A DNA stretch of 64,000 bases. Origin: Octopus vulgaris. Taxonomy: Eukaryota. Made by a program: the position numbers and the translations under genes. Each line of letters begins with the position of its first letter. Within the stretch, counting starts at the first letter, position 1. Below, in pieces: positions 11,946-12,594 of this stretch. The notes under the pieces were generated by a model. It searched no databases, was not told where the DNA came from, and saw nothing but the letters and a program-made list of their open reading frames with translations. The stretch spans positions 11,780,001-11,844,000 of the forward strand of contig OX597836.1 in NCBI GenBank assembly GCA_951406725.2. The letters are read 5' to 3'.

Positions 11946-12594
11946 TTTATAAAAAATAGGGTAAAGTAAAATAATTTACTTTACCACATTCCGAGCTTTT
12001 TAGAAATAGCAGCCAAAAATTTGGCTATTTCTTCTACTGCAAGAAAAAGTCTCCCAGACAATGCATACTCAGAAATAACTCACATAGGTATAAGGGAAAA
12101 ACAACGAAAGATCACATCCATATGAGATCACCCGAGGACAAGCCTGTTTCTGGATTAGTTGACTAAACGCCAACATTTCCTTCATCAGCTCAGAGATTTC
12201 TTCTCATTTCGATTTGAAAGTACTAAAAATCAAACATACCCGTCCGATATGGGTAACACCGGACAAACTATGCCAGACCACCTGTACCAGCGAATCCAAA
12301 AATACAAATGAGATCTAGTATTCTCCCTGTCCACCCACGTGAGTTACAGAGTAGTGCATTCCTACAGAGGCAAAACTGTAGTTAAAATTTTGGGGGAGAA
12401 AGTATTATATTGTCAATAAAAAAGGGTAAAATTAATTAATTATTAATTAATTCGACCGAGCAGTGTTCAGAGTATGTAAAACGACCATTTACGGTACATT
12501 TGAAATATACCGTAAATGGTCGTTTTACATACCGAACACTGCTCGGTCGAATTAATTAATAATTAATTAATTTTACGCTTTTATTGACAATATA
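11945..12594 (-). mobile_element. PLE pseudo-LTR-like repeat carrying a hammerhead motif and a terminal palindrome
   Basis: Flanked by (TA)n. Hammerhead at 12127-12197. Palindrome arms 12406-12496 and 12508-12594. PLE origin is inferred from this architecture. Confidence 0.6.
12127..12197 (-). ncRNA. Type I hammerhead ribozyme candidate
   Basis: Minus strand: AUCUCUGAG-CUGAUGA-A GGA AAU GUUGGC GUUUA GUCAAC UAA UCC A-GAA-ACAGGCUUGU-C|CUCGGGUGAU. All invariant core bases are present, stems I-III form, and the cleavage triplet is GUC. Confidence 0.75.

What the first reader, a model, noticed from the sequence alone, without database searches (positions are those of the whole stretch)
12127..12197. 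Near-canonical type I hammerhead ribozyme with a self-complementary stem III
Seen: the minus strand has C3U4G5A6U7G8A9, G12A13A14, A15.1:U16.1 and C17 (GUC; predicted cut between 12137 and 12136). Stem I is about 9 bp, stem II is long with an internal loop, and stem III (ACAGGCUUGU) is fully self-complementary with G-U pairs. The only deviation is A-A at 10.1/11.1. Known: PLE pseudo-LTRs carry type I hammerheads whose short palindromic stem III lets them act as dimers. Inference: this is an active or recently active ribozyme of a cephalopod PLE-derived family that may not have been characterised.
Basis: partly seen in the sequence, partly recalled or inferred. Interest (0 to 1): 0.75.

Follow-up and report, generated by a model that had tools for sequence, protein, structure and literature searches.

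The report
Hammerhead-like ribozyme in a folded repeat
A 71-base hammerhead (self-cutting RNA) motif really is there, inside a ~435-base strongly self-pairing unit that looks like a lone copy of the ribozyme-carrying mobile elements already known in animals, but cutting and family membership could not be tested.

Summary
Every core position is present, and the only deviation is A·A at 10.1/11.1.

It is unlikely to be chance:
- A descriptor of this quality occurs about 1e-3 times per 64 kb in simulated sequence.
- Only about 1% of relaxed chance hits have a fully palindromic helix III.

Rfam 15 finds no hammerhead family, even at E<=10 on 106 nt, so "near-canonical" is too strong.

New here: the motif sits in a 435-nt unit (11961-12395).
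- The ribozyme strand folds far better than shuffles (z = -6.7).
- It forms a three-way junction, with the hammerhead as one branch.
- The arms differ by 22 G·U against 2 A·C, so pairing is kept on that RNA strand.
- Two copies are predicted to form the double hammerhead through a 10-bp helix III.

This fits a solitary monomer of a retrozyme-like, PLE-related non-autonomous element better than a PLE pseudo-LTR. There is no RT/endonuclease ORF, no second copy and no terminal repeat nearby.

Other genomic copies could not be retrieved, so covariation, copy number, the cephalopod origin and cleavage remain untested.

The parts
12127..12197 (-). Type I hammerhead-like motif (whole)
   Evidence: Sequence read. 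It is the only hit of my descriptor in the window. There is no Rfam hit.
12189..12197 (-). Helix I, 5' strand (AUCUCUGAG)
   Evidence: Pairs with 12136-12127: 6 bp, a bulged U at 12130, then 3 bp. Pair probability is 0.75 in the isolated 71-mer.
12182..12188 (-). Core C3 U4 G5 A6 U7 G8 A9
   Evidence: CUGAUGA.
12151..12181 (-). Helix II: A·A at 10.1/11.1 (12181/12151), GGA/UCC, 3x3 internal loop, GUUGGC/GUCAAC, loop GUUUA
   Evidence: Pair probabilities are 0.87-1.00 in every sequence context tested.
12148..12150 (-). Core G12 A13 A14
   Evidence: GAA.
12138..12147 (-). Helix III, ACAGGCUUGU: 3 bp plus tetraloop as a monomer, 10-bp intermolecular helix as a dimer
   Evidence: Monomer pair probability is 0.02. 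The dimer MFE forms the 10-bp helix.
12137..12137 (-). C17. The predicted cleavage is 3' of it, between 12137 and 12136.
   Evidence: Position derived. Cleavage was not tested.
12127..12136 (-). Helix I, 3' strand (CUCGGGUGAU)
11961..12395 (-). 435-nt highly self-paired unit that carries the motif, lying between (TA)n runs; 39% G+C
   Evidence: MFE is -142.5 kcal/mol, z = -6.7 on the minus strand. The plus strand gives -100.8, z = -4.5. Only 1 of 90 folds of repeat-free control windows was more negative. G+C.
12302..12360 (-). 5' arm of long-range helix IR1
   Evidence: Pairs with 12060-12123: 51 bp, 8 of them G·U.
12060..12123 (-). 3' arm of long-range helix IR1; it starts 3 nt after helix I
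12207..12300 (-). Hairpin IR2, the second branch of the three-way junction (35 bp, 10 G·U)
11903..11944 (.). (TA)n run flanking the unit
   Evidence: This is weak evidence: the window has 189 such runs.
12591..12613 (.). (TA)n run on the other side, beyond the palindromic insert

Best explanation
The motif is a variant type I hammerhead carried by a solitary monomer of a small, non-coding, highly self-paired retroelement. Its closest match is the animal 'non-LTR retrozyme' class, which is thought to derive from the terminal repeats of Penelope-like elements.

Proposed mechanism (all steps inferred):
- Such units are transcribed from the ribozyme strand, here the minus strand.
- In multimeric transcripts, two neighbouring hammerheads pair through their palindromic helix III. 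Each then cuts 3' of its own C17.
- The released unit-length RNA folds into a compact structure, can be circularised by a host ligase, and is copied back into DNA by a reverse transcriptase supplied in trans.

At this locus there is only one unit. The ribozyme could at most cut a read-through transcript once, and probably poorly, because monomeric helix III is unstable and 10.1/11.1 is A·A. The copy is best seen as a dispersed, non-mobile and possibly decaying derivative.

Shown here: the motif, its improbability by chance, the dimer prediction, and the strand-specific self-paired unit. Inferred: transcription, cleavage, circularisation, retrotransposition and the existence of a family.
For: Motif and chance level:
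- Full core and three helices.
- Chance rate 1.0e-3 per 64 kb.
- Three typical hammerhead features that my descriptor did not require are present: a palindromic helix III (1% of chance hits), C17 (16%) and G2.1-C1.1 (8%).

Dimer:
- The dimer MFE is the double hammerhead, 10.7 kcal/mol better than two monomers.

The unit:
- z = -6.7 on the ribozyme strand against -4.5 on the other strand.
- Three-way junction IR1 / IR2 / hammerhead. The fold with the hammerhead enforced is only 3.4 kcal/mol above the MFE.
- The arms differ by 22 G·U against 2 A·C, p = 3.6e-5.
- 39% G+C and 435 nt.

Literature:
- Animal retrozymes are ~170-400-nt, low-GC, highly self-paired units with type I hammerheads.
- Their helix III is short and palindromic, and some act as dimers (PMC7229834).
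- Dispersed monomer derivatives exist, and consensus lengths range from 51 to 972 bp (bioRxiv 10.64898/2026.07.22.740005).
- An axolotl retrozyme hammerhead with a U·U mismatch at the base of helix II still cleaves (PMC7229834).
- The giant squid genome has 235 Rfam Hammerhead_1 hits (PMC6962438).
Against: - No Rfam hammerhead model matches, even at E<=10 on 106 nt.
- A·A replaces the 10.1-11.1 pair, which PMC4209133 describes as highly conserved.
- There is only one copy and no tandem array in the 64 kb.
- No related sequence was found in any collection reachable here. These searches had almost no power for this genome.
- In long transcripts helix I is out-competed: pair probability 0-0.2.
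- The unit's fold z-score is at about the 1st-2nd percentile of repeat-free windows, which is notable but not unique. Its strand asymmetry in energy is only at about the 95th percentile.
- The (TA)n flanks are uninformative.
Confidence: 0.5

Rival explanations
1. One reading: the motif lies in the pseudo-LTR or 3' end of a (5'-truncated) Penelope-like element. It is a solo remnant of an autonomous PLE copy rather than a retrozyme-type unit.
For: PLE hammerheads share several traits with this motif (PMC4209133):
- A long helix II.
- An extra nucleotide between A9 and 10.1; A12181 can be read that way.
- A palindromic helix III.
- Most occur as single motifs from truncated copies.

Some PLE clades (Naiads) insert preferentially into (TA)n (PMC8557442), and the unit lies between (TA)n runs.
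Against: - No RT or GIY-YIG coding remnant lies within about 8 kb on either strand.
- There is no direct repeat and no inverted partner copy of the unit.
- 24% of the window lies in equally short gaps between (TA)n runs, so the flanks say little.
- The extra nucleotide is matched by a second A on the 3' side, which the PLE consensus lacks.
- The strongly self-paired unit is a trait described for retrozymes, not for pLTRs.
Confidence: 0.2
2. A chance hammerhead-like motif with no ribozyme ancestry. It happens to lie in an unrelated structured or foldback repeat, or in unique DNA.
For: - Rfam finds nothing.
- The isolated motif's MFE is not unusual (z = -0.61).
- A genome of about 2.5 Gb is expected to hold about 40 chance motifs with helices this good.
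- The 10.1-11.1 pair is missing.
- The region is rich in inverted repeats and foldback sequences.
Against: - The combination of palindromic helix III, GUC and G2.1-C1.1 brings the chance rate far below one per genome if the frequencies are multiplied. This choice of features is post hoc.
- The motif lies on the same strand as the G·U-preserved structure.
- It sits as a discrete branch of that structure.
Confidence: 0.2
3. The unit is another kind of structured RNA locus on the minus strand, such as a long hairpin or small-RNA precursor or a SINE-like element. The hammerhead-like core inside it is non-functional.
For: Strand-specific pairing and strongly negative z. Helix I is out-competed in long transcripts.
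Against: - No Rfam family matches the structured part of the unit at E<=10. The only listed matches in 11800-12500 are low-scoring ones, nearly all to the TA-rich flank.
- No tRNA-like part was found.
- This reading does not explain a complete hammerhead core with a palindromic helix III.
Confidence: 0.1

Closest known systems
Animal non-LTR retrozymes with type I hammerheads (Cervera & de la Peña 2020, PMC7229834; Li, Clavereau & Pollet 2026 preprint, 10.64898/2026.07.22.740005)
   Same: - Unit of a few hundred nt with low G+C (39%).
- No ORF.
- Predicted highly self-paired RNA, with the hammerhead free to form as a separate domain.
- Type I topology.
- Helix I of 6 bp before a bulge.
- Short palindromic helix III that allows a dimeric ribozyme.
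- Dispersed monomer copies are documented for the class.
   Different: - No tandem array here.
- Helix II is much longer: 31 nt, with an internal loop.
- A·A at the base of helix II. The nearest precedent is the U·U of axolotl HHR_Amex2.
- Not detected by Rfam.
- Copy number, expression and circular RNA are unknown.
Minimal and atypical hammerheads in pseudo-LTRs of Penelope-like elements (Cervera & de la Peña 2014, PMC4209133)
   Same: - Long helix II.
- An unpaired nucleotide directly after A9.
- Palindromic helix III, implying dimeric action.
- Low expected monomer activity.
- Most genomic copies are solitary.
   Different: - No PLE ORF or pLTR at this locus.
- Helix I is longer than the 4-5 bp typical of min-HHRs.
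- Helix III is a full 10-nt palindrome rather than absent or 2-4 nt.
- There is an additional unpaired A before G12.
Rfam Hammerhead_1 (RF00163), including newt, Schistosoma and cave-cricket satellite hammerheads
   Same: Same core, type I topology, GUC cleavage triplet, C1.1-G2.1, and dimer-prone helix III.
   Different: Scores below every reporting threshold of Rfam 15. This is probably because of the 31-nt helix II, the A·A and the longer helix III; that reason is inferred, not tested.

Membership tests
Hammerhead ribozyme, type I | Conserved core C3 U4 G5 A6 N7 G8 A9 / G12 A13 A14 / A15.1-U16.1 / H17 | tested here: met
   All positions are present at 12188-12182, 12150-12147, 12138 and 12137. 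Descriptor hit.
Hammerhead ribozyme, type I | Three helices around the core, with helix I open-ended | tested here: met
   Helix I has 6+3 bp, helix II 3+6 bp, helix III 3 bp or a 10-bp dimer helix. The designed structure scores -15.2 against an MFE of -17.3 kcal/mol.
Hammerhead ribozyme, type I | Watson-Crick pair at 10.1-11.1 (usually G-C) | tested here: not met
   A12181 · A12151. Natural precedent for a mismatch here: U·U in axolotl HHR_Amex2, which still cleaves (PMC7229834).
Hammerhead ribozyme, type I | Score at or above the gathering threshold of an Rfam hammerhead covariance model | tested here: not met
   No hammerhead family is listed at gathering or at E<=10 in 701 nt or 106 nt.
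Hammerhead ribozyme, type I | Site-specific self-cleavage 3' of position 17 | not testable with these tools
   Needs in vitro transcription or end-mapping.
Hammerhead ribozyme, type I | Core conservation and helix covariation among homologous copies | not testable with these tools
   No second copy in the window and none in the reachable collections.
PLE pseudo-LTR hammerhead | Located in direct repeats flanking an RT plus GIY-YIG ORF | tested here: not met
   No such ORF within about 8 kb. No direct repeat of the unit.
PLE pseudo-LTR hammerhead | Extra nucleotide between A9 and 10.1, with G10.1-C11.1 conserved | tested here: inconclusive
   A12181 followed by G12180 fits. But C12152 is separated from G12 by a further A (12151), so the pair does not stack directly on the core (PMC4209133).
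PLE pseudo-LTR hammerhead | Long helix II and palindromic 15.2-16.2 / loop 3 | tested here: met
   Helix II has 9 bp in two segments. ACAGGCUUGU is fully self-complementary.
Animal non-LTR retrozyme | Head-to-tail tandem repeats, each with a type I hammerhead | tested here: not met
   Single unit in the 64 kb. Monomer derivatives of retrozymes are described, so this does not exclude descent from one.
Animal non-LTR retrozyme | Unit of a few hundred nt, low G+C, non-coding | tested here: met
   435 nt, 39% G+C. ORFs are no longer than 63 aa and have no family match above threshold.
Animal non-LTR retrozyme | RNA predicted to be stable and highly self-paired, with the hammerhead able to fold | tested here: met
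   z = -6.7. 22 G·U against 2 A·C. The hammerhead-enforced fold is 3.4 kcal/mol above the MFE. Control distribution.
Animal non-LTR retrozyme | Many genomic copies; expression as linear and circular RNA | not testable with these tools
   No eukaryotic genome or transcriptome collection is available. The protein-collection surrogate has no power here.

The most novel reading that the evidence does not exclude
The unit represents an uncharacterised retrozyme family of this (reportedly cephalopod) genome. Its hammerhead tolerates an A·A pair at 10.1/11.1 and an extended, internally looped helix II. It works only as a dimer through a 10-bp helix III. It sits as one arm of a three-way-junction RNA whose pairing is under selection. 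That would be a natural hammerhead variant that current covariance models miss.
Probability: 0.2. Interest if true: 0.5.

Novelty: new variant of a known kind. Interest (0 to 1): 0.4.

Why it matters
If real, it adds a hammerhead variant that Rfam models do not detect. It would also add a retrozyme-like element in a lineage where only raw Rfam counts have been reported (235 Hammerhead_1 hits in the giant squid genome, PMC6962438). An A·A at 10.1/11.1 that still supports cleavage would widen the accepted sequence space of the ribozyme. It would also imply that genome counts of hammerheads are underestimates. If it is a dead or chance copy, it is ordinary repeat debris. Either way the kind of element (type I hammerhead in PLE-related non-autonomous repeats) is already well described.

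Tried and rejected
1. Rfam at gathering and at E<=10 on three nested stretches gave no hammerhead.
2. A search for second copies in the window found none. I used mismatch search, blastn with words of 11 and 7, and nhmmer.
3. A search for PLE coding remnants near the motif found none. I used the ORF listing, a six-frame entropy filter and Pfam.
4. Exact-pattern scans gave 0 matches: metagenome contigs twice and viral contigs once.
5. I used spurious ORFs across the unit as probes for other copies in the protein collections, and nothing was found.
   - The positive control was an ORF of the repeat with 10 or more copies in the window. It found only one protein.
   - The negatives are therefore uninformative.
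6. (TA)n flanks as evidence of PLE-type insertion: rejected. The window has 189 such runs, and 24% of it lies in comparably short inter-run gaps.
7. A-to-I hyper-editing of a retrotranscribed RNA as the source of the G·U excess: not supported. 9 of 25 G's have a 5' G, so there is no ADAR-type neighbour depletion.
8. Raw MFE and raw strand asymmetry as evidence: rejected as stand-alone measures, because microsatellites in the window give larger values. I replaced them with z-scores against repeat-free control windows.
9. The 260-aa ORF at 38933-39712 as a PLE endonuclease:
   - It has no Pfam or PDB match.
   - It has two 36%-identical homologues.
   - The locus of one of them (L001) shares no DNA similarity with the window.
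   - I left it as a side note.
10. One constrained fold ('helix I+II enforced') used a mis-specified constraint string and is disregarded.

Full report
**Observation**

The minus strand 12197..12127 reads AUCUCUGAG-CUGAUGA-AGGAAAUGUUGGCGUUUAGUCAACUAAUCCA-GAA-ACAGGCUUGU-C-CUCGGGUGAU.
- C3-A9 at 12188-12182.
- G12-A14 at 12150-12148.
- A15.1 at 12147, U16.1 at 12138 and C17 at 12137, so a cut would fall between 12137 and 12136.
- Helix I has six contiguous pairs, a bulged U (12130) and three more pairs.
- Helix II has three pairs, a 3x3 internal loop, six pairs and a 5-nt loop.
- The 10-nt helix III is fully self-complementary, with two G·U pairs.
- The only core-adjacent deviation is A12181·A12151 at 10.1/11.1.

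**Is it more than chance?**

The bare pattern CTGATGA...GAAA...TC is not significant, with 0.62 expected per window. A descriptor that also requires the three helices finds only this site in the window, and only if 10.1/11.1 may be unpaired.
- None of 600 dinucleotide shuffles gave a hit.
- In 640 Mb of first-order Markov sequence of the same composition, motifs with helix I >=6, II >=3 and III >=3 bp occur 1.0e-3 times per 64 kb. That is roughly 40 per 2.5-Gb genome.

On helices alone, then, the motif is unlikely for one window but not for a whole genome. Three further features were not required by the descriptor, and the literature gives them as typical of real animal type I hammerheads. All three are present. 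Among relaxed chance hits:
- A fully palindromic helix III occurs in 1%.
- C17 occurs in 16%.
- G2.1-C1.1 occurs in 8%.

Multiplying these gives a chance rate far below one per genome. The choice of features is post hoc, so I treat this as strong but not formal evidence.

**Rfam**

No hammerhead family (type I, II, III, HH9 or HH10) is reported at the gathering score for the window. None is reported at E<=10 for 701 nt or 106 nt around the motif. "Near-canonical" is therefore too generous. I infer, but could not test, that three things cost the score: the 31-nt helix II, the A·A and the longer helix III. Giant squid has 235 Rfam Hammerhead_1 hits (PMC6962438), so canonical copies are detectable in cephalopod DNA.

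**The deviation**

PMC4209133 reports that PLE hammerheads carry a conserved extra nucleotide between A9 and 10.1, together with a highly conserved G10.1-C11.1. Here A12181 followed by G12180 fits that. But C12152 is separated from G12 by another A (12151). The motif is therefore one inserted base away from that consensus, or it has an A·A pair at 10.1/11.1.

A precedent exists for a mismatch at the base of helix II. Axolotl HHR_Amex2 has U·U there and still self-cleaves: 22% per hour as a monomer, and more as a dimer (PMC7229834).

Counting the A·A as one layer, helix II has four layers before its internal loop, and helix I has six pairs before its bulge. This is the 6/4 geometry that PMC4209133 gives for canonical animal hammerheads. 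It is an observation, not a test of tertiary contacts.

**Monomer versus dimer**
- The isolated 71-mer prefers an alternative fold: MFE -17.3 against -15.2 kcal/mol for the hammerhead.
- Its MFE is not unusual (z = -0.61).
- Monomeric helix III has a pair probability of 0.02, while helix II is about 1.0.
- Two copies are predicted to form exactly the double hammerhead with a 10-bp intermolecular helix III: -45.3 against 2 x -17.3 kcal/mol.

At this locus, however, there is no second copy to pair with in cis.

**Surroundings**

The motif is single-copy in the window. No RT or GIY-YIG coding remnant lies within about 8 kb. Nearly all ORFs there are translations of microsatellites.

The unique sequence that carries the motif runs from 11961 to about 12395. 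It lies between a (TA)n run at 11903-11944 and, on the other side, a 190-nt palindromic insert (12406-12594) followed by (TA)n at 12591-12613. Some PLE clades (Naiads) prefer (TA)n targets (PMC8557442). But the window has 189 (TA)>=5 runs, and 24% of it lies in equally short gaps, so this carries little weight.

**New finding: a strand-specific, highly self-paired unit**

The 435-nt unit folds on the ribozyme strand to -142.5 kcal/mol, against -105.8 ± 5.5 for shuffles (z = -6.7). The other strand gives -100.8 (z = -4.5).

The structure is a three-way junction:
- A long-range helix, IR1, joins 12360-12302 to 12123-12060 (51 bp).
- A hairpin, IR2, spans 12300-12207 (35 bp).
- The hammerhead domain spans 12205-12124.

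Forcing the hammerhead fold costs only 3.4 kcal/mol and leaves the rest unchanged.

I aligned the arms of IR1 and IR2 against each other. Of the transition-type differences, 22 are G·U on the minus-strand RNA and 2 are A·C (binomial p = 3.6e-5). Pairing is thus preserved specifically on the strand that carries the ribozyme. This points to selection on, or passage through, an RNA of that polarity.

Controls:
- Raw MFE and raw strand asymmetry are not exceptional in this microsatellite-rich window.
- Among 45 repeat-free 435-nt control windows, z averages -1.1 (SD 1.7). Only 1 of 90 folds is more negative than the unit.
- The unit's 42 kcal/mol strand asymmetry is at about the 95th percentile.
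- The minus strand of the unit is G+U-rich, which contributes to the asymmetry.
- An ADAR-type neighbour signature is absent.

**Interpretation**

The unit combines five properties:
- Type I hammerhead with a short palindromic helix III.
- Unit of a few hundred nt.
- Low G+C (39%).
- No coding capacity.
- A compact self-paired RNA in which the ribozyme can fold as a separate domain.

This is the published description of animal non-LTR retrozymes (PMC7229834). They co-occur with PLEs and are related to PLE pseudo-LTRs, and they leave dispersed, immobile monomer copies (bioRxiv 10.64898/2026.07.22.740005).

I therefore favour a solitary retrozyme-like monomer (0.5) over three alternatives:
- A remnant of an autonomous PLE (0.2).
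- A chance motif (0.2).
- An unrelated structured RNA locus (0.1).

Transcription, cleavage, circularisation and mobilisation are all inferred from the family, not shown. Whether this particular copy can cut is doubtful. It is alone, monomeric helix III is unstable, helix I is out-competed in long transcripts, and the 10.1-11.1 pair is missing.

**Limits**

No eukaryotic genome collection was available.
- Pattern scans of metagenome and viral contigs found nothing.
- Using ORFs across the unit as probes in the protein collections also found nothing.
- That approach has almost no power for this genome. An ORF from a repeat with 10 or more copies in the window found a single protein.

Copy number, covariation and the claimed cephalopod origin therefore remain untested.

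**Verdict**

It is a variant of a well-known kind of element, of moderate interest.

Noticed in passing
window 12406-12594: A 190-nt near-perfect palindrome (arms 92% complementary) with AT-rich ends (ttgtcaat...attgacaa). It sits in TA-rich sequence directly beside the hammerhead unit. It looks like a small foldback or MITE-type insertion.
   Followed up: partly
window 38933-39712 (-): The only long, complex ORF in the window (260 aa, no stops). By eye its C-terminal half carries a GIY-YIG-like motif. It has no Pfam or PDB match. Two 36%-identical proteins exist on ENA contigs. No RT lies nearby, and no hammerhead motif lies next to it.
   Followed up: partly
window 13116-13340, with copies at 16921-17010, 24919-25014, 34170-34252, 35739-35829, 39913-39995, 44192-44282, 55904-55998, 59468-59555 and others: A short interspersed repeat with at least 10 copies in both orientations (82-87% identity), often next to (TA)n. 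ARAGORN finds no tRNA-like part. It is unrelated to the hammerhead unit.
   Followed up: partly
window 30591-30973 and 36556-36938; also 30974-31262, 63563-63861: Inverted copies of a ~300-380-nt repeat, 95-97% complementary. Two of them lie 5.6 kb apart. They may be the ends of one element or independent copies of a young repeat.
   Followed up: no
whole window, e.g. 3650-4400, 8030-8950, 9590-10030, 16290-16800, 37240-37880, 40700-40950: Extreme microsatellite load. 18% of the window is perfect short-period repeats, with 189 (TA)>=5 runs. There are long (TGTA)n-, (AAT)n-, (TCTA/TCTC)n- and purine-rich arrays. These dominate every ORF list and folding statistic.
   Followed up: partly
window 20362-20392 (+) and 18167-18078 (-): Two very weak hits of a relaxed minimal-hammerhead descriptor: a U3-A8 variant with 3-bp helix I, and one with only 2 bp of helix III. 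Both are AT-rich and were judged to be chance.
   Followed up: yes
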